Assembly (NCBI GenBank): GCA_028023455.1
Contig: JAQFVV010000006.1
Span: 11,718,001-11,782,000 of the forward strand
Origin: Epiperipatus broadwayi
Taxonomy: Eukaryota > Animalia > Onychophora
Reading direction: 5' to 3'
DNA: 64,000 nucleotides
Shown: positions 37,379 through 63,029 of the stretch, piece after piece
Numbering within the stretch: the first letter of the stretch is position 1
How the letters are laid out: each line of letters begins with the position of its first letter
Position numbers and translations under genes: made by a program
Notes under the pieces: model-generated
Told to the model about the DNA's origin: nothing
The model's input: only the letters and a program-made list of their open reading frames with translations
Database searches by the model: none

Positions 37379-37465
37379 GTAGGTATTTTAATATTTTATC
37401 AGGCATGACATTTTTTTATGTATAATTTGAAATTTTGCCATTTTATGAATTAAAGAAGAGGATGA

Positions 37466-37657
<192 letters not shown>

Positions 37658-37931
37658 TAAGAACCCTACAAAATCGTCGTTAGACATAACTATCATGAGG
37701 CATTAAGTGTTACTATTTTTAAGAAGACAACACTAATAGTGCATTTGTATTTGCATATTAGTTTGATTAATTTGAAAATGTTAAACTAATTTAAAGCAGT
37801 GAAAATTATATATTGACCAATCATTTTTGATGCGTTTATAAATATCTCCCAATTAAATTTATAATTGATTACTTTTATTATATTTCAGAATATATATTTT
37901 TTGATTTTAGTCTTGTAGCTTTATAATTAAC

Positions 37932-38146
37932 TTAAAAGGTGACTGCTGGAGGATTGCATTGGATCCTAAGGTCTAGGTGCAGTAATCTCAGATCCAAGGC
38001 TTTTCACTGGTAAAAGCCACAAGCTAGAAACTAGTCTGGGGATATTGGATGAGTAGGCTCTAGATAGGGATTTTATGCACAAGCCTTCTGGCATCCATTG
38101 ATTACTCTAGTTGGCACAGGGTGGCACTACTGTATGGAGAGTTTGC
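37932..38146 (+). mobile_element. Family-1 single arm, about 275 nt downstream of the last constitutive NF1 exon in the window
   Basis: Near-complete match to the family consensus; the hammerhead core is mutated (CTGGTAA). Confidence 0.8.
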
Positions 38147-40304
38147 TACTGCTTTAAAAATATGTCTTGGGATCATTTAATGTTTTTTAGGTGTCTATTC
38201 ATGGGTTTAAGGTATATGTTCTGAAGTTGAAGGATTTGGTATGTCTAATCTAATATATAAGTGAACAAAGATGTATTAATTGAATCATATGTCTTGAACA
38301 AAGTGATAAATTTAGTTGCCAATCACATCTTTGCTCATCAGTATTTCAATTTGCATTCTTCCAATGTTATATCTTTATTGTTTATATATGTGACATACAG
38401 TTATGTTAGCAATTCATTTTTTTTTTTTTTTAAACTATCTACAATAACTTCATCATTTCTCAAAACTTCTATTCATTGTTAATGTAAATTCCATTACTCA
38501 CATCTATTAAAATAAACTGCTTATCAAAGGATGTCATGCTCATTGGAGTTTCTTTTGTTTCTTGTTCTTTATTATTATCATAGTAGAAGGGTCGTCTCAA
38601 ATGAGAATTAACTATGAATTATTAATAAATAGTGCTTGACCAAAAATATCTCCAGCTATCTTGTAGGATAAAGTATTGGTTCATCAAAGTCTTTGTTTGC
38701 TAAAGCTAGTGTAGTATCATTATGAACCTATTATGCCATCAGTCATCTTTTATACCAGTTAGGTCAGTAGAATTGTGCGTTTATGCAACTACATATCCAT
38801 CCTTAACTATACACACCAGCAATTTTGACTTCAATTCTTTGTTTCATTTTATGAAAGTATAATACTTCCTAAAAAATATTTTATACTCAACTTGAGCATA
38901 GTTTTTATGGGAGAGGAAGACCCTGTTGATGTTATAAGCGGTGTTTTAAAGAAATTGTAAATAAGTGCATTATTGCTTGTTGTTATTGAAAATAGTATGA
39001 TGGAGAATAGGAGTCAATGAAAGATTATAATTAGATAGAGTATCAAAGGCTTCCAGAAAGAAAAGTTTGTTGCAGAAGAATCAAAGTTAAAAGATGGTAT
39101 CACAAAATGTCAAACAGAATGATGAATATAGCATATTCTATATGTGGACATATTTGTGGTTCATTGATTGGTTTATATAATGGCAAAACCCATCTTTATT
39201 GTATCATCATCGTCTATCATTTGTTTTACCCTTGAAATTGTAATAGTCAGGTTCATTTGCTAAAAGCTTCTACTGACGATGATGATGATGATGATGAGAG
39301 CATGATTGAATTTGTTTAGGTTTTTTTTATACATGGTACAAAAGAATTATAGATGTGTATTTTTAACATTATTGAAAATATAATTGATAGTTTGATTTAT
39401 AGTTTTAAAGCTATAAACAAAGCCATCTTCTTTGTTTATAATGGTGTTAAAAAGTTATAAAGTTATTCTCTGTAATCTTGTATAGTGTTAAAAAATAAAA
39501 TGGCTTCATCTTACATAAAATATCAACTGACTAAAGCAGTTGTGTTTTAAAGCAGTCAGATATTTTACCACCAACCTAAAAATTAGCAATATTTTACCAA
39601 AACACAAGGGTTCAATTCTTATGGTTTAAGGTGTCTTATAAAATTTCTTGATGGTTGTAAGACTTCTTTTATGGGTATGGACAATTGTTGCATTAGTGTC
39701 TTGTATGGGTACAGGCAATGGTTGCATTAGTGCTAGAAGAGAGGAACAATTTAGTATTATGAAATAATTCATAATTTTCATTCATTCTTTACAATTTTGT
39801 TATTGACCACAATATAAATTTTGCAATACTCTAAAGTCTTATACACAAATGCATTTCTTGCTGCTAGAGAACTATCAAGAAGCCATTGTATTTGTAAAAA
39901 AGGCCTGACTACAATAATAAACATAATGAAACAACAAAACTTTCATTCATGTATAACATTTTATAAAACATGTTCTAGAATGAAAATATTATTTACCACT
40001 AGCCTCTCTTAATTTAATCTTTTCTCTGTTGCATATTAGATTAAATAACATCTAAATCACATAAAATTTGATCTAAAATTACTTTTTTGCTACCATTGTG
40101 TCTAATATCATCTGCTGAGCCTTCCATGTTGTCTAGATGATGGTAGATTATATCAGCACTACTATATAACAAGCATTAATATAAACAGATGAACATGAAA
40201 ATTATTCATGTAGACACATGCATATACATATCAAAAGCAAACCATTATATGACCATATTCAGAGACACAAAAATTAAAATTACTTATAATGAATAACTAC
40301 ATAC

Positions 40305-40465
40305 GATACCATTTCCAACATTCTTATACACTTAACAATACTATTTTTTATACCAAAACTTTACTCTTACAATTTCCATCTCTGATGATGACTGCAGGAC
40401 AGTCCTAAAGTTTTGGTGTGAAAAATAGTATTGTTAAGTGTATAAGAAGATTGGAAATCGTATCA
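40305..40465. repeat. Palindromic element with a hammerhead-like CTGATGA and stem II in the loop
   Basis: Core arms 40321-40363 / 40406-40448 differ at 2 positions; the loop holds CTGATGA-T-GACTG[cagga]CAGTC. Confidence 0.75.
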
Positions 40466-41545
40466 TCTGTAAATATAGAAATCAATACATAAAGAAAGGA
40501 GGAAGTAAAAGAAAATTGTATTACTTCCATAATGAATAACTAGTATCCAATTAACATTTAGTCTTGAAATATTTATTCTAAATGTTTTTCATAGTAGAAA
40601 CAATGATATTTTGGTCATTCTCATGTCTTATGTTCACATTAAGCTTTTCATTAGTATATCTGTTGTTTTGATTAGTTTACAAGAATGATTACAATTGTCT
40701 TTGTTAACTCATTAAAAAAAATTACCCACTTTCTAATGCACTTTCCACATTGACAATTTCGACTGCTTACCAGTTTTTTTCAGGTTTCAAGCACCAAACC
40801 TTTTAAATTACAAATTAATAGTTTTTAAAAATTGTTAATTTGTAATTTGAAAGGTTTCTTGTTTAAGATCTGAAAAAGACTGATAGGCAATTTAAACTGA
40901 CAGCAATTAAATAAAACATTGTGAAAAGTCTGTTAGAAGATATGTGATTTTTTTTAAAGCAATTTAAAGTAAGCTAAGCTATAAGAACGGAAGAGATTTT
41001 GAACATTCTTTTTGTTAAGTTCCCATTTCTTAATCAGGAGTGATGGATCCAAGAGCTAATGAATTCCTAGCTCAAAACTCAACCTGTCACAAAGATGCGT
41101 ATTACCACTTGAGCAATTAATTCGATTATTTATATAATCCATATGCCATTTAGAAATTTTTAAAATCTTAACTATTTATAATTTTTTTATACAAATAAAT
41201 GTATAATGTATTGAGATGGTTTGATCTCATTGTACACAACACAATATCTGTGTGCACATGTATTGAAATGAATACTGTCTTATTCATTTCATTGTCAGCC
41301 ATGTGATCTTCCACATGGTAGTAAGCTGGTTTTCAGTGTTGTGAGGATAGCTAATAAATATAGCAGTACAAAAGAAAGTTATATAAAATAAAAATAATGG
41401 CTTAAAATAAAGTATAAAATATAGTAAGTAATGTTCAAATTTTGGAATAAATTATTAAAAGCCATATTTTAAGATAATTATAAATAATAATAGGTTTTAT
41501 TATAAAAGTGTTCAAATTTAAGAGAAACTAATAAATTATTGTCAA

Positions 41546-41618
41546 GCGTTGGTGGTCGAGTGGTCAGCACAGCCGCCTTACAAGCAGTAGTCCCCGGGTT
41601 CGCTTCCCGGCCAATGCT
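41546..41618 (+). pseudogene. tRNA-like sequence, anticodon TAC (Val); probably a pseudogene or SINE head
   Basis: 73 nt; 7-bp acceptor stem, perfect T stem, anticodon at positions 34-36. The D stem and anticodon stem have mismatches, the T loop is TTCGCTT (A58C), there is no T-run terminator, and an A-rich tract follows. Confidence 0.65.
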
Positions 41619-43752
41619 TTGACACATGAAAGAAAAAAAAAACAAATAGCTAATAAATTATATAAACTTTGCTAAAACTATTTCTTTTATCAAAGATTAT
41701 AAGAATGTATGTAAAATTATGATGACAGGGAAGTATTGAAAACAACTCAATTAATTATACTAATAGTAAAATAAATAGATTTTAAAAGTTTATTTAAATA
41801 ATTTATATTGTGGCTTAAATAATTAGATTAAAAATAAGGTAATAAAAAAATTAACCTTGCTTTGAGATATGAGATTCGATCACAAGAGAAACAAACATTT
41901 TAGTAATTAAAATAAAATGAAATCATAAAGATGTTGAAAATGAGATTTTCAAAAATGTTATAAACAGTAGATCAAAAGTATATTTAGTCCATTTTTCTTG
42001 AAATTAATCAATCTGGATTTTTGCTTTTTTCGAGACCTTTAAATTTCATTTTTATTATTTCTAATCAACACATTTATTAATTATTATTTTGAGTTATTTC
42101 ACTGTTATTATTTAATTCTAGAATAAAATTATATCTATATATATATATCTGTAGTTGTTCACAGTAACCATGATTCTTGCAATTTCAAAATTATTTCAGG
42201 CTAATAGTAAATATGATATATACATGTATGGACAGTTATATGATTATCAATTATTTAGATGGCATTAAGGTGATAAAAGTCTTCTTTAAAGTCTATTTCC
42301 TTTGTGGTTTTTATGATAGTAGCCAGTTTATTGACGAGCAGTACCTTAATGACATCAGATGGCCAATGCATTTATGATGTTCTGTATTGATATGATGTAT
42401 GTTTACCTTTAGAGTTATTTTTAGCACTTATAATAAATAAATCAATAACTCTTATCTACCATGTAAATTATGCATACATGTATAATTTATATATCATACA
42501 GAGAAGAAAATTCGATAATAATATTATTTTGTCAAGCACGCTTTCGACATCGTGTGCCAGATTCATGGCAAACAAATTAAAGTGACTGGTTAATATTCCA
42601 ATGCATGCTCATTGGAACACTAGTATTTCTTAGATTGATGTTATTAGACTTGGCAATAAACCAGGTCTCTTTTATTCTCCTCTTCTTATCATTAGGTTCA
42701 TTGCATTAATTATTTGAGGATAAAATTGATGTCCAGCATTTCTCCTATGATTCAAGAAAACAGAATTAATTTGAAAATTCACTTTAGACCTTTTATATTG
42801 GTATTTGTATTGTAGTAAACATGTTGTCATATTAGCTGGACATGAATTTTTATCCTTAAATAATTAATGCAGTCTGAAATGAGCCTAATGATAGGAAGAG
42901 GAAGCTAAAAGAGGCCTGGTTTAATGCCAAGTCTAATAATGTTGTAAATCTAGGAAATACTAGGCCACTGAGCGTGTACTGGGATATTATTTTGGTTGGT
43001 TTAATTTGTTTACCATGAATGTTGTATGCTGTACCGAAAGTACACCCAGTTAAATATTATTATTATCATCAAATTTTCTTCTCTGTATGACACATAGTTA
43101 TACTTGTGTGTATATTTTAGCACTTATGTATGTGAATGCAGCTAAAATATTGATTGCTTTTAGAAAATGATGCCCCAAATGTGACATTGGTTACATGATG
43201 GTTCCTAAGATTTAATAGTACGTCTCTTTTAAATCAAGTCATAAGGGTTTTCTATTGAATATTGTTGACAGTTGCTGATAAACCATGCTTATCACATATT
43301 GTGTATATTGTATTCTTGTGCTGATTCTATCCTCATTTGTTGATAATTCATTTATCGATGATGATTTCCATCGCTCCTGTTACACCCTCATTCTGTAATG
43401 TTTCAATATGTGCATAACATTGATAAAAAAAGTAATCTTCCAATGAGAAATCCATAAGAATGTAATTTACAATTCACATTTTCTAAAGTCATTTTAATTT
43501 GCAAATAATAGTTTCTTTCATATCAATTGGTAATTCAGAGTCTAACCTCCACATTATGACTAATTAATTAATTAATGATACTCAAAGGAATGGATCATTT
43601 TTTGGCTGACACTGAATTAGCATTAATATATTTGTAAGTTAATTGAAATGTCTCACTTGTAAATTAGTCTTATGTTATGCGCATTTGAAGATTATTTCCT
43701 CAGAAATATTGAATATTCTTAATGCTATATATTTAATAGCTAATGTTTAATT

Positions 43753-43798
43753 AAAGGAATTATTGAAATGATTAGAAAGGAATTATTGAAATGATTAG
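43753..43798. repeat. Exact 23-bp tandem duplication
   Basis: AAAGGAATTATTGAAATGATTAG twice. Confidence 0.9.
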
Positions 43799-44320
43799 AA
43801 TATATATATATATATAGGTGGGTGTGAATTATGAAATAATTTTTGTTTGTGTGTGTGTTTTCTATACATTATTATAATTTTAAAAGTACTTTGACATTTT
43901 AGTATATGATGAAAACTTTTTATTTTTTTTTCTAATCATTTGGAGGAGTTTTGGGTTATTTTGTTAAAAACAAAATCAGATATCCAGTATTATTATGTTT
44001 CTAAATTGATTATGATTATTAAGATTTTAAAAAAATATGAAAATTATTAATACTTCATTGATTGTAGTAGTATTATAGGTATATTTTAGCCAGAAAAAAA
44101 TATTTTTTATAATATGGGGTCAGGGAATACTTCAAATAAGTCATTGCAATAATTTATCTTGTGTAATTGATTGCTCTGTTATCGTTAATATTTCTAATTG
44201 ATTTTTAAAAAAAAAATATTATTTTTTTCAAGTATATTTTAAATTATCACAGAATTTTTATAGTATTTTTTTATACAATGTATTCTTATGATGAAAGTCC
44301 ATGATCATTTCTTTCTTCAG

Positions 44321-44347
44321 CACCTATATTGAGGAATTAACCAACAG
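44321..44347 (+). CDS. NF1: Candidate 27-nt symmetric NF1 microexon encoding (N)TYIEELTN(R/S)
   Basis: Acceptor atcatttctttcttcag, donor CAG|GTATGA, length divisible by 3. Only the phase-2 frame required by the upstream exon is open; the other two frames contain TGA and TAA. Confidence 0.65.
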
Positions 44348-47300
44348 GTATGACTTTCTTAATCTTTTATCATATATTTACTGCCTCATTTTATATGATT
44401 TAACTGCTTTAAAATTTTTTTGAAAAGCGTTTGTGGTAATGGAATGGCATTGCATGTTTGTTTCTTACTTGTTCGCTAAAAATTGCTTTATGTTTGCTTT
44501 TAATTTTTATTATTGTATTTTATATTTATTTAAGAGGTGCTTATAATTATTTACAATTTTATGAAGTATATTGATAATTTTCAAATTTTTCTTTTAAATT
44601 TTATACCTATATATCTAAAATGTACACACGTATACAATCTTACATAATTTTCATTTATATTTAAATATTTTGATGCCTATTATTATATTGTTAAAAAAAT
44701 GCAATGTTTTCAATGCCTTTTTTGTTATCGTTTTGTTTCGTCAAAGCTTCGATTGGCTAGTGTCTTCTTAATGGCTTAAATTTGTTTTTCGACTTATTTG
44801 AATTTTAAAAAAATTGTAATAAAGTAAAATTATACAAAAGTTTATCCAGCATGATTTGGCGCAGTTGGTAGAACGTACAAGTTAGGATTCGATTCTGGCA
44901 CTTGAATTTCTTAAGATTCCCCAAGCAATAACGCCATTAGCATGTTTTTTATTTTATACAAAAGTTTACGTACATATTTATGTATATATTCATTTACACT
45001 TTGTCTCACTTTTTTATTTTATATGCATATGGTTTTAATATATATTATGATATATTAATTAAAATTTCAATTTTCCAATTGCTTTCAGTAATTTTTTTAA
45101 TATCATTTTTTTCTCAAAAGTTTTGATTTGCTAGCAGTCTTCACAATTTTAATTTTTTTAATACAAAGTAGCAATTAAACTTGAATTTCAAAAATAGTAC
45201 TAAATAAGATTATAATACAGAAATGCGTATATAATATATATATACATATGCATAGAAGTGTATATGTATATACTATTAGGAATAATTCTCTTTGTTGTAT
45301 TATAAAACCATCAATTGTAAATTGGATGATCAACGGATATTAGATGATAGTACTATTATATCCAAAACCTGTACTATCATATTAACATTCCCTTACTTGT
45401 TTCTGACTTTGTAGTTTTCAACAGTGAGAAACTTGAATTTTTAAGTTCATTAAGTCCAAACTTATCATTAGCTAGGTGCAAATCCAGAGATGTGGTTATA
45501 CTGGAATTGTGGTTATAATGTTACCATTATCTATTGTCCATAGATTAGTCAACTTTCAATAGATGATTTTGGAGTGGAGTGAAAATAATTGCTCTTAATA
45601 GTATGTACATTAAATGTAAACAGAAAATCATGTCACATTGTTATATACATATATTGACATGCATAAAATTAATGAATAATATTAAAGACAGAATACAATT
45701 TTTATTTTCTATGTTACTATTTTTATGTAAATATATAATAATCAAATAAAGTTGAAACTGGAAGAAGATTGCTAAACAGCTAAAAGAAAGTAAAAAAAAA
45801 CAACCAAACAATAATAATAATAATTAAAAAGAACCATTGAAAATAATAAAGCATAAAATTGTAGGTTTAAGTCAATGTACCACAATACTTAATGTGAACA
45901 GAAATAAAAAAAAAAAAGTTTGTTTTATGTCAGAGTCTTTGTTTCAGTCTTTAAGGTAAAATCGGTTAGATTTTGTTCTTGTTATTAAATACTAATTTTT
46001 AGCAGCCATTTAATTAATAGAATTGTGGCAGACAAACACATAATTAAAAATGTATATTTTTGAATTGATTTATATGTGAGATTATTTTTTCCTAGACCTT
46101 TACTGAAATATTATTTTTTCTCTCTTTGAAGCAAATTTATGGGTATAGGATTATTTTTATTCCATCCAAATAATTATACTTATGTAAACAAACTTGACAA
46201 AGTGTAAGCTCCAATCGTAGCAAATGAAACATTTGCTAATCAATCACCATATTATATTAAAAAGTGACCATTGGCTCCATAACATGTATACGTTTCAAGA
46301 AGAATTTGTCTCATCTGCTGACTAAATTGCTGCAATTATCCATGCAAATATAGCAACTGTTGTGTTATATGAATAATGATGAATCAACCTAGTTGAATAA
46401 TCAAAGCTATGATCATCCATAAATAGCCTAAATGTTTCACACATCGGATTGGAGATTACAACTTTCTAAGTTTATTTATAATCTGTTTATGTATAAACTT
46501 TACAAAATTTAAAATATTATTATATAAAAGTAAATAATACCTATAACCAGCTTACGGCATGTCTGTCATCTTCAGTAGCATTTTGTTGTTAAGTAAGTAA
46601 TATAATTTTCTTAATATATATAAATTATGGAAAGTTGGCCATTCACATAAGAATATCAATGTTATACAATCTTATGATAATTATTTTACCTATTTAATAT
46701 GATTTTGCTTTTATTGTTTAGAAGTTGGAAATATCACTTCATCATTGTGTAATGTTTTAGATGTTTCTTACAAAAAGTTTGAATAAATTTATATCGTAAG
46801 TTTCCCAATTTTTGTAAAATTGTATATATATATTATAACGATTGAAATGAAAGTGAAGATCGAATCTAACCGCAAAAACAATATCTGCACTACAAGGGCG
46901 CCATCTAGGCATTTGAGCCTAGAAAAATTTATAAAGTAGGCAGATACGCGCTGTTAAGATTCCACTTTCTTTAAATATTCCGATCGTTAGCCCAAGTCAC
47001 TAGCTCAGTGGAGACGCAGAGATAAAAATCTATATCTTAATTTATATCTTAAATATAAATAAATAAAAGCCACTGCCAGAAATTAACACATAAAAATATT
47101 TATTTACGCACATATAAAATCATTCTAAATTCGAGGAATAAATTCAACATTTTAGATTTTTCTATTAATCTTTTAATTTTACATTTAACTAAGTTTCAAT
47201 GAGTTTAATATTTTATTTAGATAGTCAAGTATGAATAGACTACATAGATTTGCATTTGAAAATAAAACATTCTATCCCTATTTAACCTTAGGCTAAAATT

Positions 47301-49304
47301 CGCAGTCAAACTGGCACCAATCCATCTGATACATTTATGTATTCAATGTAGCATGAAAATACAACAGCACAAATATACTATACTGTCAGGAATGGACATC
47401 TGAACAGTATAGTTAGAGAAAACATTGACTCTTGTCCAATACAGGAATATGACATCTGTATAGCAAGAAGAACAATAAAATAAAAACTCCATAGGAAGGG
47501 ACCGCGATCCTTTTTGCCGACTTACAATCCCATCCATAGGCAAAGGGTTGGTGCGGTGTATTTAGTGATTCTTCACGTAGCGAAACTTATACTACGTCTA
47601 CTAATTACACAAATATATCCAATCCATTGACCCAATTCAACAACGACACAAATAGCCTAAGATTACCCTCCCCTAATATAACTTTACAAATCTATATAGC
47701 CATTCACGCCCGACTTAAATTTAAATACGTTCGCACAAATGCATTTTATAAAATTTGTTTTAAAAATGTTGAGTACAGATCAGCTGCACAGATTCCACGG
47801 TCAAAAACATTACAAATTAAACACAACCGATCAAAATACAAAGTCATCGATAAACGTCACTTGCATAGGGAATATATAAATCCCATTAGCATTCATCGTA
47901 AGATGCTTGCAGTGATATTGTTGACATATATTCTAATCGAATGTGAAAACCACAACATTATCAACCGCTAACGAATCTATGCAATGTCTATACCCAACCT
48001 TAAATTTCCTCATTTAAAATTTAAACAACAAATAATTTATACAATAAGAGAAAAAAAAAAAAATGGAAATGATTTTTATCAATCGGAAAACATATAAAAT
48101 TAAACATTATTAATTGATTTTAAACTTAAAAGTCAGATAGAAGTTCATAAGCTTGAACGAAAGTTCTTAGTTATTTTTAAATTTAGAGTTCATGTCAATA
48201 TAGCTTACAGTAGAAGAGTCCAGGTTCCTGTTTTTTAATTCCCTGACGTCTCCATTGGAAGATAATGTTCTGGAGGTAGCATTAGCTGGTTCCATTCTTG
48301 TATCACGAGTCTCTAACAAAAGAAGGGGGGGGGGGGGAGCGGAAAGGGGGGGGCTGATCGATTGCTGGTTTAGCGTGAAATGCGTATATTCGAGTGAGGT
48401 TGTTTATCTTTTCAGCATATATGTGTTTAGGTTGTATCGGTGTTATTAGATAGAGTGGAGAGAGATTGGTAGTGTGAACGTCTAGCAATGACTAATTACA
48501 TATTATTTTACTAATACCCTATATTAAAAGGTTATAGTTATTATTATTGCAATATTATTTCAGCTGACTCAGTAAAGCAAAGCAACAACTTGAAATATAA
48601 TTTTTTTTTTGATAATATTTTTATGATAATTCAAACTTTTATTCTTTAATTTTTTAATATTAATATGTAAATATGGCAGACATTTTTACGTTAATAATTA
48701 TAACAATATCAAAACTATCCAGCTTAAGATAAAAACAATCTCATCCAGCAGTGATGTAGGGGCATGCAGCTCAACAGCTTTGGGTCGCTAGATATGTGCA
48801 AATTATTAAAATTGGTCCGTAATAACATGATAACAGAAATTTGGATTAATGGAAATTATCAAACAGTTTCGTTTTTATAATTCAGTGTTATACGGGAAAT
48901 GTTCAAGAATTGGAGAGAATTAGATCTTATTGTCAATGCTGCTGGAAACAGAACATGTTTCAGAAAGTTTCTAAAAATGTTACCTTTTCCTAATGTATGA
49001 CTTGAATAAATAGTGTGTATGTGGGAATTATTAAACATCTATTTTAATAAAACACATACTCTGGCAAAAATTAGACCATGTGACCAGAGACTGCTAAGTG
49101 AAACTATAAAGATTTTTAAAAGACCAAAAGCATAAATGAAAAGTGTGAATGGAAGAAAATTAACAATAGTTGGAAAAAGTTATTGGAGGATAAAGTATTT
49201 TCTAAAACTTCTCAATCAATAGAATTTGAGTATGAGGAGAAAATAAGAAATAAATAAATTAGGATTTAAAATCTCACCACATTTTTATAATTTGAGAAAG
49301 AAGA

Positions 49305-49346
49305 AGCTCTGACGAGAGTACTTGTTATTGTATTGAAACGTAAGCT
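49305..49346 (+). ncRNA. Solo minimal type-I hammerhead ribozyme motif
   Basis: AGCU-CUGACGA-G-AGUAC[uuguuauu]GUAUU-GAAA-CG-UA-AGCU. All core residues are present; predicted cleavage after A49342. Confidence 0.6.
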
Positions 49347-49800
49347 ATTTTAGCTATTATATAATTTTACTACATGGAAATAATACTATGACTATCTTTT
49401 ATCCATGAGAATATTAGAATTATTATTCAACATTAATATATATATATATTTAATTTTGTTTTATATACTTTTGAGATTCATTTTGGATTCATAGACTTTT
49501 TGCTTTGTTTAGGAATATAATTTTGATTGTTTACATAAGGATTTGATTAGCTTCTAATATGTCCCTAATAAATTTGTGCAGTAAATTAAAAAATAGAATC
49601 ATTTTTTAATATAAAGACATAATATATAATATTTGTTATTTTTCTTTTATTCTAATAATAGTACAAGCAACTAAATTTAAGTACATAGAAATAATTTTAC
49701 CAATAATTTTGATTATGATAAACAAAATAATAATGTAGTCACGATTTGTGTCAAACATTTTTCTAATATGGCAAATATTTTCAAATTATTATTATAAAAT

Positions 49801-50157
49801 CTAAACATCACATGATCACCATTCTTTATGCTTACACAAGCTGTTTACACAGAGACAAAACTCTCCACACAGTAACCCATTCAGTGCAAACCAGAATAAT
49901 CAATGGATGCTGGAAGCTTTGTGCATAAAATCCCTATCTAGGTGGTTGCTGGAGAGTTGCATTAGATCCCAAGATCTAGGTGCAGTGCTCTCAGATCCAA
50001 GGCTCCTCACTGATGAAGGCCACTAGCTAGAAAGTAGTCTGGGGATATTAGATAAGTAGGCAATAGATAGGGATTTAATGCAAAAACGTTCCTGCATACA
50101 TTGGTTACTTTGGCTTGCACTGAGGGGGCTACTGTATGGAGAGTATTTCCTCTGTGA
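49801..50157. mobile_element. Family-1 foldback element
   Basis: Starts CTAAACATCACATGATCACC; the inverted left arm is joined to a + strand arm carrying CTGATGA...GAAA. Confidence 0.8.
50004..50045 (+). ncRNA. Minimal hammerhead motif (family 1), core intact, loop III non-palindromic
   Basis: UCCUCA-CUGAUGA-AGGC[CACUA]GCUA-GAAA-GUAG-UC-UGGGGA. Confidence 0.55.
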
Positions 50158-52792
50158 GTCTTATGAAATCTAAGTGGTAATGTCATTGTTAATATTGAAA
50201 TTTAATTTGTTTTTGAAACAAATGTTTCATTGTTGTATATTTGTACAGAATAATTATATATTAGTTGCTACAATCTGATTATTAACTAAATATTTTCTGT
50301 TACTGTTTTTCAACAGATTTTTCAACTACTGTTCTTGTAAATCTTAATGTATTATTACAAGCAATGATTTTAATTCACATATTAAATGTCATGTCACTTT
50401 AGAAATTATTTCATTGGTAAAGTTTATAATAAAGATGGAAATACACCATGTAGTTACTTTTTCTACTAACTGACATTGATAAATATGGCTCATTGATGAG
50501 GACTAGTCAACTTGATGTTATCAATTTAATATGTGATCATATCAGAGACATAGATTATAACAAACATTTCTGTTAAATTTATTTCTTGGATAATTAATGT
50601 TTCGTATGATAATGTGTCCGTGGGGATATATATTGTATATCAGATCTCATATCAATTTATATTGAATAGCGTAGAATTTACCACTATCTAGATATTCATA
50701 TTTAATAAATGATGTGCAAGTAATAATGGTCAATAATGAAAAAAGTGATTAATTGATATTAAAATTAGATCTTAATCTTTTTAATATACAATTTTTTTTG
50801 TAAATCTATTTTTTTTTATTTCTTAATCTACCTTAGTTATGTATGTTGTTTTTTGAAATTAACATACATACCAACATAAATTCCAACATATATTCTTTTA
50901 AGTACATTTTCTAATTCTAAATCTCAATTTTTGATAAGAAAAATAACTACATTATTTTAGTGTATATTATAAAATATTTAGTTTTCTTAAATTTAAACCT
51001 TTCATGTTTTAATCATAATTAACCTAGTACATTACTTTCAAAAATTTATTATAAAATATTATATTAAATAGCCATTTTAATAAAGAATAACAATTCTGAT
51101 TTCTATTATCAAGTCTCACAATTACTGTTAACCATTTTTTCCCTGTGTATGAGATCACATGGCTAACCATGAAATAGATAAGACATTATTTCAACATAAA
51201 CATACACCAATATATATTTTAATTTTGCTGATATGCAAAGTATATATTGACACATAATTGTTATAACAAGAAAAGATTGATTGTTGATGAAATAAAGTAA
51301 GCAAATTTATTTTCCTGCATTTTTTTGTTTTTAATTAATGTTTCTGTAATTCAATTAATCATTTTCTAATGGTAGTATATTTTATTTATATTTTAATTGT
51401 ATTTACATTCGCGGATTAATTTATGTATGCAAAATATGTTTTAAAATTTGTAGTAAATGTAGTCTCCTTTTTTATTCATGATTTCAATATTTAGATTTTG
51501 TCTATTTTTAATAACAAATATAAAAAAAAATAAAGATATTAGAAATTTATAAAAAAATAATGTTGTAAACTGTAATTTTTATCTTGCAGTGAATCTGTTG
51601 GGAAACCTGCAATTGTAAAATATCACCAACAGACGGCTGATATAATTTTTTTAAAATTAATTTTATTAATCTTTTTCATTTTATCAATAATTTTTATCCC
51701 GAAAAGATTGATGTTGGAAGATACAAAAGTACTGTGACAGTTTTTTTATTTACTGATTTATTTTGAAAATATCTGTTTTAACTAATTTACTGTTACAGCA
51801 CCCATTGCATTTTTTTTTTAAAAAAAAATTTGGTCAGAAATAAAATCTTTTAACACAATGTATAAATAAAACATCGTATGTTGCTATACATTTAATATCA
51901 TATGCAAAGCAGTAAACTGAAAGCATAAATGAATAAAATTTAAACATTTTAAAAGTTATTTATATTTATTCATAAATTCTTAGACAAATTAGTAATAAGT
52001 TTCTTATATTCCTGATAAAATTTTGATTGAAATGATATATTGCTTTTCAAAAAATGAAAATACTTTGATCTTTTATTTTGAATGCAAGACCCATCTGAAC
52101 GAAAATATATTCAAGTATTATTACATCTTTCATAACAGGGTAAATAAATATTAGATCATGCAATAATATGTTCTTAAATGTTTGTTAAAAATAACGGTGA
52201 TAACTTATGATTTGAAAGAACTAATATAATTAAGTATGCATGCAGATAATTTTACACAAACATGCATACATTTATATGTATTAAAACGAAACATTGGAAT
52301 TAACTTTGTAATTTTATGTATGATAATAAATGAATATTTATATAGTTGGTTTATTGAAAATTGTATTGTAGAGTTAATTTTAATTTTTTGATTTATTATA
52401 TGTTATTGAGCCTGATATATATATATATATAGCCATTTACTTGCACAAATTGTGGACTAATTCAATATTTTTTTAAAAAAAATAATGTAATAATTTTATG
52501 ATCTGGAAAATAGTTTTGAATTAATTTATTGCAACAGCTATAAATTACATATTTGTAAGTGCAAGCTATATATAAGTCATGTGACATCTGGCTTGTTATT
52601 ATTACTAATATCTTATTATAGAAAGATGATTGACTATTAGTAAAGAAAAACTGCCAATTCTTTGCAAGTATTCTTATGAATTCCTATTTCTAATTTTAAA
52701 TTTATAATAAAAAAAAAGCTTTACAAAAATATATTTTAGAATAGAGATTCACAAAAAATAAAAAAATAAAAATTATAACCATGGGATTATAT

Positions 52793-53192
52793 AGTTGTAT
52801 TTATATATTGGACTATTTCCATCATCTAATACAAAGTATTGAATGTCTTTAGAAAAATTTAACTTTATTTAAATATTCCAAATACATTCAACTGTTAGTA
52901 ATAGCACACAGGTTAGTATGCATAAGTTTCAAGAGGTATTCTCTCTTCTTTAGGTGTTGCTGGCCTGTTCAGTGACAGTACTAGCATGGGAATCAAACCT
53001 GGACCTTGAGATTCAATTCCCATGGTAGTTTTGTTACTGGTCAGGCCAGCAACACTTGAAGAGAGAGGAAAAGAATATCTTTCAAAACATGTGTACACTA
53101 ATCTGTGTTCTTTTACTAATCGTTGAATGTTCTTTGAAAAGTTAAATTTTTTTAAAGACATGGTGGAAATAGTCCCATATATAAATGCAATT
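52793..53192. mobile_element. Foldback element with about 200-bp diverged arms
   Basis: GGTGTTGCTGGCCTG / CAGGCCAGCAACACT and GGACTATTTCCA / TGGAAATAGTCC pairs; centre near 53005. Confidence 0.75.
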
Positions 53193-54486
53193 AAAATACC
53201 GTTGTTCTGCTAATTTAAACAAAAGTCAAGACAACTCACTATATATCAAAGCACTTTAAGCACTTAGTAATGCCAGACATTCTCCGAGTTATTTTTGAAG
53301 TCATTTAGAAAATTCATTTATCTAATTTTAAAGGAAGAGGATATAATCACCATTCTTTAGATATTTCAAACTATTCATTAGAAAAAAGAGAAGGGAATAT
53401 CTTTTCATTTATTAGTAGAAAGAATAAAAATAGTTTTAACTTTTTAAGCCTTTAAATTTTATCTTTAAAAAAAAAACAAATCTGGAGGGGTAGGTTAGGC
53501 TTAACATTATTAATTATAAAATTGTTAATTAGACCTTCTTTGATTAATTATTTTTTGTTGTTATTCAATTATAAAATTAATCTTGTACTTTGGAGTGTGT
53601 ACATACTGAATATATATACATTGCATCTATCTAAATATTAAATCACCTCACATGATTAAGAAATTCAGAAATCGTCCACCATGAAATAAATATATTAAGA
53701 ATCCATATTTCAAAATAGCTAAAGTAGAGGGCAGTTTCGAAATTTCTTAACCATGTATTTAATATTTGGATATTTAGTTTAGTTTAGCAGTTTGCAATAG
53801 GATTATTGCATCTTATATATATGTGTGTCAAAAACGCATATTATATACCATTTGCTACTATGCAAATTTAATCATTTGCATCAAGACCAGGAACCAATTA
53901 TTATGAATAGACTGACTATTGTATTTCATTTCTGTATTTTTTTTTTTAATTAATAAACTACTTACTATAATTTTTAAAAATATTTTATCTATTATTTAGA
54001 AATAAGCTAGTTTAAAAATGAATTGAACGTTATATAATAAGGTAGTATATATAAAGATGTGTAGGGTACATTTTATTTATTCTGTAAATATAATGAGCGT
54101 GCTAATAGCTGTTTTTTTTCCCCATGAATTTAAGTTAGGTAGCTGGATTTGAATACATATAGATGTCTGAAAATTTCAGATTTTCTACTTAATACTTAAA
54201 TATTTGATAAAGTGCTGGGCTTGTACTTTAGATCTAGTATCTAAATATCCTAGCACCTCTGATGAGAACTGTTAGCCTGATACTGGTAATTCTAGATAAA
54301 GATTTTAAACGCTTTGTCTTGTAGCTAATTCTTTTGCTTATGATTATGTCACTTAGTTTAAACTTTAATAATCAGTAAATGTCTAATGAAAGTGCTTATT
54401 AAATCCCTATCTAGTGCTATCCTATGCACTATTCCTAGACTAGTGTTTTCCTGACAGTTTGTAATGAGGGTATTTTAGTTGTGTTT

Positions 54487-54616
54487 ATTTATTGGACTAT
54501 TTCCATCATCTAGTTATTGAGTATTGAATGTCTTTAGAAAAATTGAACTTCATTTAAATTTTGTAAAGACATTCAATACTCAATATTAGATGATAGAAAT
54601 AGTCCAATATATAAAT
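54487..54616. mobile_element. Short, internally deleted relative of the 52793-53192 foldback element
   Basis: Same termini (TATTGGACTATTTCCATCATCTA...GTATTGAATGTCTTTA) in inverted orientation. Confidence 0.7.
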
Positions 54617-54772
54617 ATCCCCAGGCTACTTTTTAGCCTGTAACTTTCATTAATGAAGAGCTTTGGATCTGAGAATATTGGATTAGACAGCATTAGATAG
54701 GGATTTATTAAGCACTATTGTGTGACATCTTAATTACTAAAGCTTACACTAGATGGCATAACTGATGAACAT
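54615..54772. mobile_element. Family-1 fragments adjoining the 5' end of the LINE
   Basis: GAGCTTTGGATCTGAGA, TAGATAGGGATTT and TAAAGCTTACACTAGATGGCATAAC blocks, as at about 15610. Confidence 0.55.
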
Positions 54773-54774
54773 TT

Positions 54775-56479
54775 TTGTTTGTAGTTACACAACTTATGGA
54801 GATGAGTAGGAATTCAGATAGATCGTTATATATGAGTTTTATAGATATAGAAAAAGCATATGATAGAGTAAATAGAAATAGATTATGGGTAAGGTTAGCC
54901 AATTTGGGAATGGATGAAGCTTTAGTAAATAGTATTAAGAAATTATATGAAAACAATTATTATACTTACCAATTAGGGGATATAGAATCAGTTAAAGTTA
55001 AAAATAGGATGGGATTAAGGCAAGGATGCCCTATGTCACCGATTTTGTTTTTGTTGTTTTTGAGTGAAATGGAGAAAGCAATAGAAAGACTAGGAAGAGG
55101 GGTAGAGATATCGTTAATAGGTGGCAAAGGAGTATATACTTTGTCGGGTCTTTTTTTTTGCAGATGATATCTTTTTATGTGCAGAAAGAAGAGAAGATAT
55201 GGATATTATGTTGAGGACATGTGCAAGGGTGGGTAAAGAGATGGGGATTAAATTTAGTGAAGAAAAATCAAATATAATGATTGTTAATACTGGGGAAACA
55301 GAGGATGTAGATTTTTTATTGGGGGATATAAAGTTAAGTTTGGTGGATAGATATAGGTATTTGGGAATCATCTTATGTAATCAGGAAAATTGCTTGGATA
55401 ATGGGAGAAAAAATGGGTAAATGAAGCAAAGAAAAGAAAGGGTTTGGTAAAGAAACTAACAGTATTTTCATATAATAAATATGATGTAGCTAGAATTGTA
55501 TGGAAGGGAGTTGTAGTAGCAGGGTTAACATATGGTAATGATGTGTTATGTGTTAATAAATGAGTATTAGATTACTTAGAGAAAGTACAAAGGGAAGTAT
55601 TAAGACATGCATTAGATGCAGAGATGTGGACAGCAAAGGAGGCAATTCAAGGAGAAATGGAATGGCCAAGTTTCTATATGAGAGATGCAAAAAGTAAAAT
55701 GAAAATGTTTGGTAAGTTGCAGTTTATGGATAGTAAAAGAATAGCCAAAATACTGTTTAATTGGGTTATGAGCAATAACAAGATGGAAGGTAATGCGGTA
55801 TGCAAAAGATTTGGATAAAGAATTTATATCAGTATACTTGTATAAAAGGTGGATGATTGTGTTAGGAGGATTGTTGAGTATTATAGTGGTAAGGAATGGG
55901 ATAAAAGAATAGAAGCATTAATAAAAAATAGGGAGTTGGAGAGATGGAGAAGTAGTATTGAGGGTAAGAAGAGTTTAAATATATATAGAAGTAAGCGGGA
56001 TATTGGAAGTGAGTTGATTTATGATAATAGTAAGGAAAGTAGTTTATTGTTTAAGGCTCGAACAGGAACTTTAGCAACAAGAGAATATACATGTAAATGG
56101 AAAACTATGGGAGATTTAGTGTGCAAATTGTGTAAGGAAGGTATAGAAAATATTAGGCATCTGTTGATTGAATGTAAATGCTTGAAAGCAGAAAGGGTAC
56201 AGATAATGAAGTTGTGGGAGAATAGGTATGAACAAAGTGACTATACAGAAAGTGAGTTATTAGTTTTTATGCTGGGTTTGCGAAAAGATAAGGGGGATTT
56301 AGATTTAAAGGCCATAGAGTTGACAAAGATTATGTTGTGGAAATGGGATGGGGCAGAGTATGGGAGGACTTAGAGTGGGGAATGGAAAATAAAGTGGCTA
56401 ACAGGTTTATCTGGGCATAATTGCTGAGATATTCTTGACTTTGTTTAAGGAGAAGCCAAATACATCACATCACATCACT
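54775..56479 (+). mobile_element. 5'-truncated non-LTR retrotransposon: reverse transcriptase plus C-terminal CCHC, disrupted
   Basis: RT motifs FIDIEKAYDRV, GLRQGCPMSPILF, FADD, YRYLG; C-terminal CKLC...HLLIEC. Frameshifts near 55155 and 55420 and an in-frame TGA near 55561; (ACATC)3 tail at about 56462-56478. Clade not resolved. Confidence 0.92.
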
Positions 56480-57499
56480 AAACTGGGGTCATATGATGTC
56501 TTATTGATTTTATATTAATACTTACTGTATTTGACAATCCTTTTGGTTAATCATCACTTATTATTTATGCTTTTACCTCTAAAATTTGCATCTAATATTT
56601 TTATATTTCAAGCATAATTATGCAGAATTGAATAAAAAAAAATTGCCAATGGCTTCTATGGATATTACGAACAATTAGTTGAGTGGTTAATAAAGAATTG
56701 TCATATCATTACATATATAAAGAGTTATCTATATATTTGATTTTTAATAAGTTGAAAGTGAAATCTGAGATTAAAAGAAATAATGTGACGTAATAAAATG
56801 TGATTTGTATTTATAAATTTATGTACAAGGTAAAATCCCAAAAATGTAAAATGTCAACAAATCAAAATTTTAGACAACTATCAGTTTTATTATTAACTAT
56901 ACTTATATATAATTTTTAATTATGGTTACTGATTGATTTCAAATAGAATAATAACATCACAGACAGAAAAGCATAATTTTATTCTTAATAGATATAAAAC
57001 AAATTATCTGTAGAGATTTTAAATGTTTTCAGAATGTTAGATTTGTTGCGAATTTGATCTAATGTTATATTAATAGTTATTTCCGGTTTCCACGTTTTAT
57101 AAAATGGTAACATCGCAGTCAGAATAACATTTTATACTTATTAGATACAAAACAAATTATTTTATGTAGGCATTTAAAGTTTTGAGATTTTATTCTATCG
57201 GGATTTTTGCTGAAGGACTTGCAACTATGAGTTATGCTGGGATAAACCAATTAAAGAGCATCGTTGCAAAAAAATGTTTGGCTAAAATATGACATTTAAA
57301 GATAATTTTGTGTAGTGTACATCAAATCAATAATAAGCAACTGTCTAAGATATTTGAGTAGTTATATTTGACTTGATCTAATTGAAATATAAGAGGAATA
57401 AAGCAATGAAATATCACATGACTAGCTTATATATTGTGGTATTTAGTAGCATACTGTTTTACCTTTACACCATTCATTGTAAACTGTATAAAACAGTGA

Positions 57500-57660
57500 C
57501 AGTGCTTTTCTATCCAAAACCACAGACTAGTTTCAAGCTTATGGTTCTCATCAATGAGGAGCTTTGGATTATGGAATTGTGCAACTGGACCATTGGGATG
57601 TAATATCCCTTTCGTTTAGCTCACATCATTTACCTTTATGTTATACTATCGAGCTACCAG
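57500..57660 (-). mobile_element. Family-1 fragment
   Basis: CAGACTAGTTTCAAGCTTATGG...CATCAATGAGGAGCTTTGGAT block. Confidence 0.65.
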
Positions 57661-57820
57661 AAAACTGAAGGCATATAAATATTTTAAATCTATTGTCATA
57701 TAGAAAAGAATCCAGAGCCGTTTCTCTATATCTTGGTATTCTTAGTTTTTAATAAAGTAACTTTATCGTGAGGCCGGAATTTGATAAAAGCCAATAAAAT
57801 ATCAAATGATGAATCACCTG

Positions 57821-57874
57821 ACTTTAGTATACCTATAGCTGTTTTACACTTTAGTATACCTATAGCTGTTTTAC
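57821..57874. repeat. Exact 27-bp tandem duplication
   Basis: ACTTTAGTATACCTATAGCTGTTTTAC twice. Confidence 0.9.
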
Positions 57875-57966
57875 TAGCATAATTTTTTACCTTTTTTATG
57901 CTACTTATTGTAAGCTTTAGATAGAAAGGGATAGTTGCCAAATAACTGTTTAATAAATCCCTATTC

Positions 57967-58360
57967 TAAACAAAGGCAAAACTCTTCATACAGTAGTGCC
58001 ACCCTGTGCTAAACAGAGTAATCAATGGATGCCAGAAGGCTTGTGCATAAAATCCCTATCTAGTGCCTACTCATCCAATATCCCCAGACTAGTTTCTGGC
58101 TGCTGGAGGGTTGCATTAGATCCTAAAATCTAGGTGCAGTGCTCTCAGATCCAAGGCTCCTCACTGATGATGACCACAAGCCAGAAACTAGTCTGGGGAT
58201 ATTGGATGAGTAGGCACTAGATAGGGATTTTATGCACAAGCCTTCTGGCATCCATTGATTAGTCTGTTTAGCACACGGTGGCACTACTGTATGGAGAGTT
58301 TTGCCTTTGTTTACAACAATTATGTGCTAGTATAGAGATGGTGATCATGTGATGTTTAGT
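57967..58360. mobile_element. Youngest family-1 foldback copy: 135-bp arms (57967-58101 / 58179-58313) with 3 mismatches
   Basis: Direct arm-to-arm comparison; the terminal motif GGTGATCATGTGATGTTTAG lies at about 58340-58359. Confidence 0.85.
58158..58199 (+). ncRNA. Minimal type-I hammerhead ribozyme motif (family 1)
   Basis: Stem I UCCUCA/UGGGGA, core CUGAUGA (58164-70), stem II UGAC/GCCA with one mismatch, GAAA (58184-87), palindromic loop CUAG, then UC. Predicted cleavage after C58193. Confidence 0.65.
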
Positions 58361-58384
58361 GGTTTAAATCCCTATTCTGTGATT

Positions 58385-58535
58385 TTTTATCCAAAATTCC
58401 CAGACTAGTTTTAAGCTTGTGGCATTATAGTGAGTAACTTTGGATTTTGGAACAATGCAACTGGACCTTTAGGATCTAATCCATCTTATCTCCAGATCCC
58501 ATCATTTATCTTTATGTTATACTATCAAGCTTAAA
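58385..58535 (-). mobile_element. Family-1 fragment
   Basis: CCCAGACTAGTTTTAAGCTTGTGGC...GGACCTTTAGGATCTAAT...CCATCATTTATCTTT. Confidence 0.6.
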
Positions 58536-59361
58536 ACTGTAAATACTATACTGCTAGAAAATTTATTTAATACTTAAAATAGTGAAACAGGAAATAACAT
58601 TCGTAATGACTTTAATTTTTACTTTATTTTGAATAATCTTGCAATTTTGTTTAAGTCTCAATTAAATATGTAATATTATTGATTTGCCTTATTTTATAAC
58701 CAATATAAGTTGAAAGATATGAAAAAATATTAATATTTTATTTGTTAATAGTTTGTTATTTCCCTAAATAATTTTTGATATATTTATATTGTACACATCA
58801 CCAGTAAAAATTTGTGAGAATGTTTATAACTTAAGATAATAATAGATAATTGATTATTAAACTACAATAATTTATTTTGGGTATTCATCTTTTTGATCAT
58901 AAGTGAAGTAATAGTATTTATTCAGTATGCTAGTATGAATCACAATAAAAAAAAATTTTAAAATTAAAATAATAATATTTTTATTTTGATAAAGTCTAAA
59001 GTTTATGTTTCTGATATATTTTTAATTAATGTGATATTTTAATGTAATTTTTTTGAAAATTTTTTATTTTTAGAATTTATATTTACAAAACAATAATGCT
59101 ATGAATTTTCTTTTAGCTTAATACTGAATCACTACACGCATATATAAACTTATATTGCGATATTTCTAATGTGAATAGGAATGACCACACATATGGTATC
59201 TATGAATATAAATTAAAAAGTTTAATTTCTCATACCTACATGAGTGTACTCAACTTTTAAACCAGTATGCATGCAGTCATAGAGGATTTAGAAATTTAAA
59301 TTTAGTTTGCCATATTCTGAGAAATATTGAGATTTGGACAATTAATAGAAAAGTAATACAG

Positions 59362-59720
59362 AGACTTCAGACCACTCAAAGAAGTATGAGGAAATACATA
59401 TTAGGAATAACAAAAAGTGGAAAAACCCAGTATATAGATAAGAAAACAAATAGGTGTTACTGACATTGTTGAAAGAATTAAAAGACTGAAGTGGAGTTGA
59501 GCTGGATGTATTGCTAGAAGAGAAGATAATAGATGGATAATTGAAATCTCACTGGAGTCCAAGAGATTGTGAAAGACCCAGAAAGAGACCACATGTGAGA
59601 TGGGTGGATGAAATAAGAGAGGGTGCAGGAGTGATTTTGAGAAGAGAGGTTAGAGATCAGATAAGATGGTTTGAACTTGGAGAGACCTTTATCCTCCAGT
59701 GGATTGAAAATAGTTGATGC
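59362..59720 (+). mobile_element. RTE-clade LINE 3' fragment (decayed), same family as 35073-35345
   Basis: RIKRLKWS*AGCIARREDNRW...RWVDEIRE...FILQW. Confidence 0.78.
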
Positions 59721-59895
59721 TGATATTGCGAGACACCAGTCTGATGTCTATTTTACCAAGTCATTTGCTTATGAGATCACGAATACCAGTGAGAAATGCT
59801 GAGAATTAATTTATGGATTATTTAAGAAGTATAATCACAAAAAAATAAAGTCAGATATCACATGACCTAATTTAACAAGCTTGTACAGTATTACA

Positions 59896-60174
59896 AATGT
59901 TATATATAGAGCTCGCAAATAAGCTCTTAATAAGCTTTGCAGAATATCCCCAATCCCACACTGGTTTCTGCTACTGGCGTCCTCAGTGAGGTGCTAGGAT
60001 ATCCTAGCACTTCACTCTATTAGATAAAGTGCCGGGCTTGTCCTGGTATTTTTAATCTAATGCTTGAACATCCTAGCACCTCACTGAGGATGCCAGTAGC
60101 AGAAACTGGTGTGGGGTTGGGGATATTCTGCAAAGCTTGTTAAGAGCTTATTTGCGAGCTCTATATATAACATT
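59896..60174. mobile_element. Family-2 foldback element: 105-bp arms (59896-60000 / 60070-60174), 5 mismatches
   Basis: Direct arm comparison; related fragments at about 54200-54290. Confidence 0.88.
60078..60117 (+). ncRNA. Hammerhead-like motif with G at the cleavage position (probably inactive)
   Basis: ACCUCA-CUGAGGA-UGC[CAGUA]GCA-GAAA-CUGG-UG-UGGGGU. Confidence 0.5.
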
Positions 60175-62489: not shown

Positions 62490-62880
62490 TTTTCAGTTAG
62501 GATATTGACATTGTCTAGTTCATTTTCACCAGTTTGGTTTTTTCTCTTTTTATTTTTTTTCTAAGCACTGTCATCTTTGTTTGGCCTTCATTAAAAGTCT
62601 TTGATGTTGGTTTCATTGTTTCTTTATTCTATTCTATTCTCACTATATCATCTGCATATCTTGCAGTTCTTTTGTTTTCCATAAGATTTCACATAGATTT
62701 TTCCCAGTCCATATGGTTTAGTACTCAAATGCTTACAGATGCTTTTAGAAGATACTGCCACAATTTTAGAATTATAGTGATAATAGAATTTTCAAATCTA
62801 CCAGTTTTCAATGTAGACAAATTTTCTTACAATCTTCAAATCAGAGAGGCAAGCAAAGTTGTTTAAAGTGTTCACAAGAC
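62490..62880 (-). mobile_element. Decayed LINE reverse-transcriptase fragment
   Basis: Minus strand reads RYADDIV, with YADD at 62647-62658; the surrounding frames are broken. Confidence 0.5.
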
Positions 62881-63029
62881 CAAACAATTTATTACATGAC
62901 CTTAGCTTATACTTTTGCTATTCATTAGCAAATTTTTTATTATTACCATATTTATATCATCCATGCAAGCCTCAATAATTGGTAGATAGATAAGGTAAGG
63001 TGTAATAAATCTTGATTCAGTATTGTTCT

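What the first reader, a model, noticed from the sequence alone, without database searches (positions are those of the whole stretch)
44321..44347. Candidate 27-nt NF1 microexon inserting 9 residues into the Sec14 lipid-binding domain
Seen: strong acceptor and donor, a symmetric phase-2 exon, and only the required frame is open. Inclusion changes RRY-K to RRY-NTYIEELTN-R/S. It sits 6.7 kb into a large intron and is absent from the ORF track. Established: short frame-preserving microexons are typically neural and modify interaction surfaces. Inference: a regulated NF1 isoform that annotation could easily miss.
Basis: partly seen in the sequence, partly recalled or inferred. Interest (0 to 1): 0.75.

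Follow-up and report, generated by a model that had tools for sequence, protein, structure and literature searches.

The report
Unproven 27-base NF1 microexon candidate
A 27-base segment deep in a very long intron of an invertebrate NF1 gene looks like a small in-frame exon, but no transcript or related species could be shown to use it, so it is most likely a chance look-alike.

Summary
The sequence observation holds. Window 44321-44347 is flanked by an 11-base pyrimidine tract plus CAG on one side and by GTATGA on the other. It keeps the phase-2 frame after the NF1 exon 37489-37656 (…ARRY-K), and only that frame is open. Its splice sites score better than 8 of 10 real acceptors and all 10 real donors of the same gene. 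A pair this good arises by chance in about 2-5% of introns of this size and composition.

The interpretation could not be confirmed. Spliced RNA contigs of four runs cross the 37656 donor, but the letters after it were not shown, and the stretch limit kept the donor and the candidate out of one call. None of 652 NF1 proteins and fragments, including many RefSeq isoform sets, has a cassette insert at this junction. Only a termite has an insert there (NFSCDR), and it comes from a tandem alternative acceptor. The candidate lacks the UGC motif and weak tract typical of neural microexons. The next NF1 exon lies beyond the window, so the intron exceeds 26.3 kb.

I give about 0.6 to an unused pseudo-exon and about 0.2-0.25 to a real, lineage-specific exon. 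This scan has not reported this before on other DNA.

The parts
44321..44347 (+). Candidate 27-nt cassette segment. In phase 2 it would read N-TYIEELTN-R. Its GC content is 0.37, against 0.20 and 0.26 in the 100-nt flanks and 0.38 in real exons.
44283..44320 (+). Acceptor region. It has an uninterrupted 11-nt pyrimidine tract (-13 to -3) followed by CAG. Possible branch points are TGAT-C (A at -17) and CTTAT (A at about -36). There is no TGC within 60 nt upstream.
44348..44353 (+). Donor GTATGA, preceded by the exonic CAG. Seven of nine positions match the CAG|GTAAGT consensus.
37489..37656 (+). Last NF1 exon in the window, encoding the Sec14 N-terminal part and ending ...FYYIARRY-K(AA|). Its donor is GTAAGA. 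Spliced RNA contigs end their match exactly at 37656.
37657..64000 (+). Intron of more than 26.3 kb that holds the candidate. No downstream NF1 exon (IGETNGDLLIYHV...) is present in it. It carries repeats, a tRNA-like element and a reverse-transcriptase ORF.

Best explanation
The segment is most likely a pseudo-exon. It is a chance pairing of a good 3' splice site and a good 5' splice site, 27 nt apart, inside an AT-rich intron of more than 26 kb, and it happens to keep the NF1 reading frame. On this reading the spliceosome normally skips it. A 27-nt exon is too short for ordinary exon definition, and it lacks the upstream UGC enhancer that recruits the SRRM (eMIC) microexon machinery. NF1 mRNA therefore joins 37656 directly to the distant IGETNGD exon, giving the canonical ...ARRY-K-IGETNGD... 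found in every relative examined.

Shown here: the sequence anatomy, its rarity, and the absence of a homologous insert elsewhere. Inferred: that it is skipped.
For: Conservation:
- No NF1 protein or fragment among 652 retrieved carries a cassette insert or a TYIEELTN-like peptide after ARRY. The set covers molluscs, annelids and many arthropods. It includes RefSeq isoform sets of up to 13 isoforms for Penaeus, Homarus, Ischnura, Schistocerca, Neodiprion, ticks and spiders.
- The only insert at this junction is the termite NFSCDR. It arises from a tandem acceptor 15 nt upstream of the next exon, not from a cassette.
- No similar peptide occurs in any frame of 60 fetched loci, and a degenerate pattern gave no hit in metagenome contigs.

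Regulatory signature:
- The UGC motif and weak pyrimidine tract of neural microexons are absent (PMC10551640).

Chance:
- The chance rate of 2-5% per intron of this size is low for one intron. It is far from negligible in a scan that reads very many long introns.

RNA:
- Contigs of all four RNA runs pass the 37656 junction without breaking there, which suggests one dominant form in each run.
Against: - The splice sites are better than those of most real exons of this gene.
- The segment is the only such pair on both strands of the 64-kb window.
- The frame is preserved and open, and GC content rises to exon level.
- The insertion point is a loop between a strand and a helix of the Sec14 domain, where a termite tolerates five extra residues.
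- The dominant transcript form across 37656 was never actually read, so inclusion is not excluded.
- No genome of a close relative could be examined.
Confidence: 0.6

Rival explanations
1. It is a real, lineage-specific, alternatively included cassette microexon. Strong splice sites would compensate for its small size. Inclusion would replace K by N-TYIEELTN-R in the loop between the FYYIARRY strand and the NGDLLIYHV helix of the Sec14 module, changing a surface of the lipid-binding Sec14-PH unit in some tissues.
For: - Its site scores exceed 8 of 10 real acceptors and all 10 real donors.
- It is unique within 128 kb of scanned strand.
- The chance probability is about 0.02-0.05.
- The frame is open and preserved.
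- It shows an exon-like GC rise.
- The insertion point is a low-confidence loop in the model.
- That site tolerates the NFSCDR insert in most annotated isoforms of the termite Zootermopsis.
- The same gene uses another small in-frame alternative event nearby, the acceptors at 37474 and 37489.
Against: No junction evidence was obtained. There is no homologue at this junction in any of 652 NF1 sequences. The UGC motif is absent and the pyrimidine tract is strong, unlike neural microexons (PMC10551640). RNA contigs do not break at 37656 in four runs.
Confidence: 0.17
2. It is a constitutive exon newly gained in this lineage and included in essentially all NF1 mRNA. The species' neurofibromin would then simply carry nine extra residues.
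For: Sites this strong would favour constitutive use if the exon is recognised at all. Each RNA run shows one unbranched contig across 37656, whose continuation was not read.
Against: The Sec14 region is extremely conserved: the neighbouring exon is 75-100% identical across phyla. No other animal examined has such an insert. Fixing a 9-residue insertion in such a segment is a priori unlikely.
Confidence: 0.07
3. It is spliced only at noise level, or it serves as an intermediate anchor that helps remove the very long intron in steps. In either case it adds no stable protein isoform.
For: The intron exceeds 26 kb, and stepwise removal of long introns is established in insects and vertebrates (general knowledge). 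The candidate's sites are competent-looking.
Against: It is not a recursive splice site. Joining 37656 to 44321 gives AA|CACC, which regenerates no GT donor. No data show any use.
Confidence: 0.1

Closest known systems
Neural microexons dependent on SRRM4 / SRRM234-eMIC (3-27 nt, frame-preserving)
   Same: The length is 27 nt. It is symmetric and frame-preserving, lies in a signalling gene with neuronal roles, and would insert into a surface loop of a folded domain.
   Different: It has no UGC motif upstream and a strong rather than weak pyrimidine tract (PMC10551640). No conservation was found, and tissue-specific inclusion is untested.
Known in-frame alternative exons of human NF1 (9a/9br, 10a-2, 23a, 48a; PMC6858644)
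   Same: They are small in-frame cassette exons of the same gene. Exon 23a is regulated in neurons according to the paper cited.
   Different: None of them lies in the Sec14 module. The candidate sits after the residue equivalent to human K1614 and is not homologous to any of them.
Zootermopsis nevadensis NF1 isoforms with ARRY-NFSCDR-IGETNGD (P0320, P0323-P0328)
   Same: The insert is at exactly the same codon and phase (K replaced by N...R), and it shows that this loop tolerates extra residues.
   Different: The termite insert comes from a tandem alternative acceptor 15 nt upstream of the next exon, in a 1.4-kb intron (L004 41680 versus 41695). It is not a separate cassette exon, and the sequences are not similar.
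Intronic pseudo-exons (decoy splice-site pairs) in long introns
   Same: It is an isolated pair of competent-looking sites deep in a very long, repeat-rich intron, with no evidence of use or conservation.
   Different: Its site scores are unusually high and the frame is preserved, which is why it stands out.

Membership tests
Neural (eMIC/SRRM4-type) microexon | Length of 27 nt or less (up to 51 in wider definitions) and a multiple of three, keeping the frame open | tested here: met
   It is 27 nt long, phase 2 in and out, and open only in the required frame.
Neural (eMIC/SRRM4-type) microexon | UGC motif close upstream of the 3' splice site, within a weak, G-interrupted pyrimidine tract | tested here: not met
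   There is no TGC within 60 nt upstream, and the pyrimidine tract is 11 nt without interruption. The criterion is taken from PMC10551640.
Neural (eMIC/SRRM4-type) microexon | Inclusion in neural tissue, shown by junction reads | not testable with these tools
   The read-laying run, limited to 6,000 letters, could not hold both 37656 and 44321. The letters after 37656 were not printed. Tissue labels of the runs are coded.
Neural (eMIC/SRRM4-type) microexon | Evolutionary conservation of the exon in related lineages | tested here: inconclusive
   It is absent from 652 NF1 proteins and fragments and from 60 loci. However, no genome or transcript of a close relative was reachable; the best exon DNA identity was about 82%.
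Cassette exon (any) | Functional acceptor and donor with transcript evidence of both junctions | tested here: inconclusive
   The site scores are high. There is no transcript evidence either way.
Recursive splice site / RS-exon | The acceptor is followed directly by GT, so that a donor is regenerated after the first splicing step | tested here: not met
   The exon starts CACC, so the junction would read AA|CACC.
Tandem alternative acceptor insert (as in the Zootermopsis NF1 NFSCDR insert) | The insert is contiguous with the downstream exon | tested here: not met
   No downstream NF1 exon exists within 19.6 kb after the candidate. The candidate has its own donor.
NF1 Sec14-PH module | The insertion point lies inside the Sec14 (CRAL-TRIO) domain | tested here: met
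   The upstream exon aligns to human NF1 1558-1614 and to residues 3-53 of the Sec14-PH crystal chains. Relatives carry PF13716 there. The AlphaFold2 model places the site between strand 54-59 and helix 72-89 (mean pLDDT is only 57).

The most novel reading that the evidence does not exclude
A lineage-specific 27-nt cassette microexon would insert nine residues (K to N-TYIEELTN-R) into the strand-helix loop of the neurofibromin Sec14 lipid-binding module. It would be recognised through unusually strong splice sites rather than the UGC/eMIC pathway. That would be the first alternative exon described inside the Sec14-PH unit of any NF1 orthologue.
Probability: 0.2. Interest if true: 0.45.

Novelty: not a real feature. 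Interest (0 to 1): 0.27.

Why it matters
If the segment were used, it would be a previously unknown way of modifying the lipid-binding Sec14-PH module of neurofibromin, whose role is still poorly understood. It would also be an example of a microexon defined by strong core sites instead of the neural enhancer pathway. As it stands, it mainly shows that excellent splice sites plus an open frame in a very long AT-rich intron are not enough to call a microexon. It also marks one specific junction that a single RT-PCR or one look at existing RNA contigs would settle.

Tried and rejected
1. Looking for the next NF1 exon in the window, by regex and by tblastn with three NF1 proteins. It is absent, so a junction from 44347 to the next exon could not be placed.
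2. Word search with the 59-aa exon. It returned only fragments of 32-103 aa, mostly genomic read-through into introns, and none had the insert.
3. Representative search, then a region search with octopus NF1 and with P0122:300-510. The aim was to catch ORFs of this species' own RNA contigs. None of the listed hits is from the species; the closest are Daphnia-like or have about 80% DNA identity.
4. Fetching contigs of P0018, P0046 and P0597. All are distant species, with exon DNA identity about 80% and GC up to 0.43.
5. Scanning metagenome contigs for a degenerate pattern of the exon with its splice dinucleotides (0 hits), and the search for related loci with the upstream exon (56 loci, none close).
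6. The termite insert looked at first like a homologous microexon. The genomic sequence shows a tandem acceptor instead.
7. A control scan of other loci using the window's base composition as background. I rejected it as invalid because GC-richer DNA inflates the log-odds, and replaced it with a background-free likelihood scan.
8. Rfam on the highly expressed repeat at about 38,000 gave no family.
9. Only single exons by reference, and natural proteins, were used. A human NF1 crystal-chain sequence (P0465) appeared among the hits and was not pursued.

Full report
What is there. The window is AT-rich (about 28% GC). On its + strand it carries part of a neurofibromin (NF1) gene. tblastn with three NF1 proteins maps ten exons between 756 and 37656. 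The last one, 37489-37656, encodes ...[55 protein letters not shown] and ends AA|gtaaga in phase 2. It matches human neurofibromin residues 1558-1614 and the start of the Sec14-PH crystal chains at E about 1e-24. No exon for the following residues (IGETNGDLLIYHV..., known from spliced fragments) occurs up to position 64000. The intron is therefore longer than 26.3 kb, and the candidate lies 6,664 nt into it.

The observation. At 44321-44347 the sequence reads tttctttcttcag|CACCTATATTGAGGAATTAACCAACAG|gtatga. In phase 2 it reads N-TYIEELTN followed by AG plus the first base of the next exon. That base is A or G in all relatives, so the last residue would be R. The other two frames contain TGA and TAA. 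The segment occurs once in the window and is not part of a recognisable repeat.

With a generic splice-site weight matrix, its acceptor scores 4.0 bits and its donor 8.7 bits. The ten real exons of the same gene score -11.7 to 9.9 for acceptors and 2.5 to 8.6 for donors. It is the only AG..GT pair 9-51 nt apart on either strand of the window with both scores at least as high.

Among 1,500 sequences simulated from a second-order model of the intron, 1.7% contain a frame-preserving open segment of equal quality. A background-free likelihood scan finds 3 segments of any length on the + strand of the window, 0 on the - strand, and 0 and 1 on the two strands of an 86-kb termite NF1 locus. That corresponds to roughly 0.05 frame-preserving open hits per intron of this size. 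GC content rises from 0.20 and 0.26 in the flanks to 0.37, against 0.38 in real exons.

The thresholds were set at the observed values, however, and a scan over many long introns will meet such cases by chance.

RNA evidence. One run search gave eight runs holding 6-16% of the words of 36400-37700, which is about the exonic share. The distance from 37656 to 44321 is 6,665 nt, so the donor and the candidate could not be in one stretch. I laid 36400-42399, anchored on the exons.

The runs are RNA. Contigs join 36606>37283 and 37378>37489 at GT..AG, and their match ends exactly at 37656. They then run on for the following lengths:
- X1 record 1: 232 nt.
- X2 record 8: 85 nt.
- X3 record 15, an 8,222-nt near full-length NF1 mRNA: 3,789 nt.
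- X5 record 22: 382 nt.

The letters after 37656 were not among the loose ends printed, so it remains unknown whether they begin with the candidate or with the IGETNGD exon. Contigs in all four runs pass the junction unbroken, which suggests one dominant form per run. No contig splices from 37656 to any site within 37657-42399. Exons of run X5 (organism B) are identical to the window. Those of organism A differ at three positions.

Relatives. I retrieved 652 NF1 proteins and fragments, as follows:
- A word search with the exon.
- A full HMMER search of representatives.
- Two further word searches.
- Two cluster listings.

The set spans molluscs, annelids, brachiopods and most arthropod groups. 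It includes RefSeq isoform sets for Penaeus, Homarus, Cherax, Daphnia, spiders, ticks, scorpions, sawflies, beetles, locusts and damselflies. After ARR[YF] almost all continue K-xGExNGDLL at a fixed offset. None contains TYIEEL-like peptides.

The only insert at this codon is ARRY-NFSCDR-IGETNGD, present in seven of nine Zootermopsis nevadensis isoforms. The termite locus (L004) shows that this is a tandem alternative acceptor: ttttag|TTTTTCCTGTGACAG|AATTGG, 15 nt apart, in a 1.4-kb intron. It is not a cassette. It does show that the site tolerates extra residues.

The window's exons are about 75-79% identical to all arthropod NF1s, without a clear nearest group. Every genomic contig I could fetch is distant, with exon DNA identity of about 82% or less. 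A degenerate pattern for the exon with its splice dinucleotides has no match in metagenome contigs. Conservation in close relatives therefore remains untested, while conservation at longer range is absent.

Regulatory signature. According to the review PMC10551640, neural microexons have weak, G-interrupted pyrimidine tracts with UGC motifs bound by SRRM4/SRRM234-eMIC. The candidate has an uninterrupted 11-nt pyrimidine tract and no TGC within 60 nt upstream. It is also not a recursive splice site, because the junction would read AA|CACC.

Structure. I built an AlphaFold2 model of the termite Sec14-PH segment from a 25-sequence alignment (A1). Its mean pLDDT is only 57. It places the insertion point in a low-confidence loop (residues 60-71) between strand 54-59 (VFYYIA) and helix 72-89 (NGDLLIYHV...). 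A nine-residue insert there is structurally plausible.

Known NF1 splicing. Human NF1 has in-frame alternative exons 9a/9br, 10a-2, 23a and 48a (PMC6858644). None lies in Sec14. Full-text searches found no report of an NF1 microexon in Sec14.

Weighing. I start from a prior of a few percent that a given very long intron hides a real frame-preserving microexon. Site quality and rarity raise the odds by perhaps twenty- to thirty-fold. The lack of any homologue and the non-neural signature lower them two- to four-fold. I end near 0.2-0.25 for a real exon, whether alternative or constitutive. I give about 0.6 to an unused pseudo-exon and about 0.1 to noise-level or intermediate use.

Its interpretation is neither shown nor excluded. 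One look at the letters after 37656 in the existing contigs would settle it.

Noticed in passing
window 37474-37489: The RNA contigs show two acceptors for the exon that ends at 37656. Runs X1 and X2 join 37378 to about 37474, adding 15 nt that encode FLCSR in the window and LLCSR in organism A. Runs X3 and X5 join 37378 to 37489. Termite and other insects carry a comparable extra stretch (LLFSSYAR) before WSS, so this small in-frame event just before the Sec14 domain appears real.
   Followed up: partly
window 37980-38150: A repeat of about 150 nt reaches summed contig depth above 10,000 in all four RNA runs. It occurs on both strands, with many variants and inverted joints. No Rfam family matches it. 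Similar translated motifs (LLYGEF..., QWM.EGLCIKSLS) recur at about 6000-6600, 34260-34700, 49800-50020 and 57957-58130.
   Followed up: partly
window 41546-41618: A tRNA-like element (Rfam tRNA, 44.4 bits) lies inside the NF1 intron. Depth is about 1,000 in run X5 only, which would fit a tRNA-derived SINE or an intronic tRNA gene.
   Followed up: no
window 9393-10673: A long, nearly perfect tandem array with a 39-nt unit, open in one frame as repeated FQAFVIKGDLILD, lies in another NF1 intron.
   Followed up: no
window 54769-56370: Open frames that look reverse-transcriptase-like on reading their translations (no family scan was run) suggest a retroelement fragment on the + strand, in the same long intron as the candidate. 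GC skew is strongly positive there (0.445).
   Followed up: no
L004 41680-41695 (Zootermopsis nevadensis NF1): Tandem acceptors 15 nt apart give the NFSCDR and K isoforms at exactly the codon where the candidate would insert.
   Followed up: yes
window 37889-37938: Two further AG..GT pairs, of 20 and 50 nt and sharing a donor at 37938, pass the background-free site thresholds. Their lengths do not preserve the frame and they abut the high-copy repeat.
   Followed up: no
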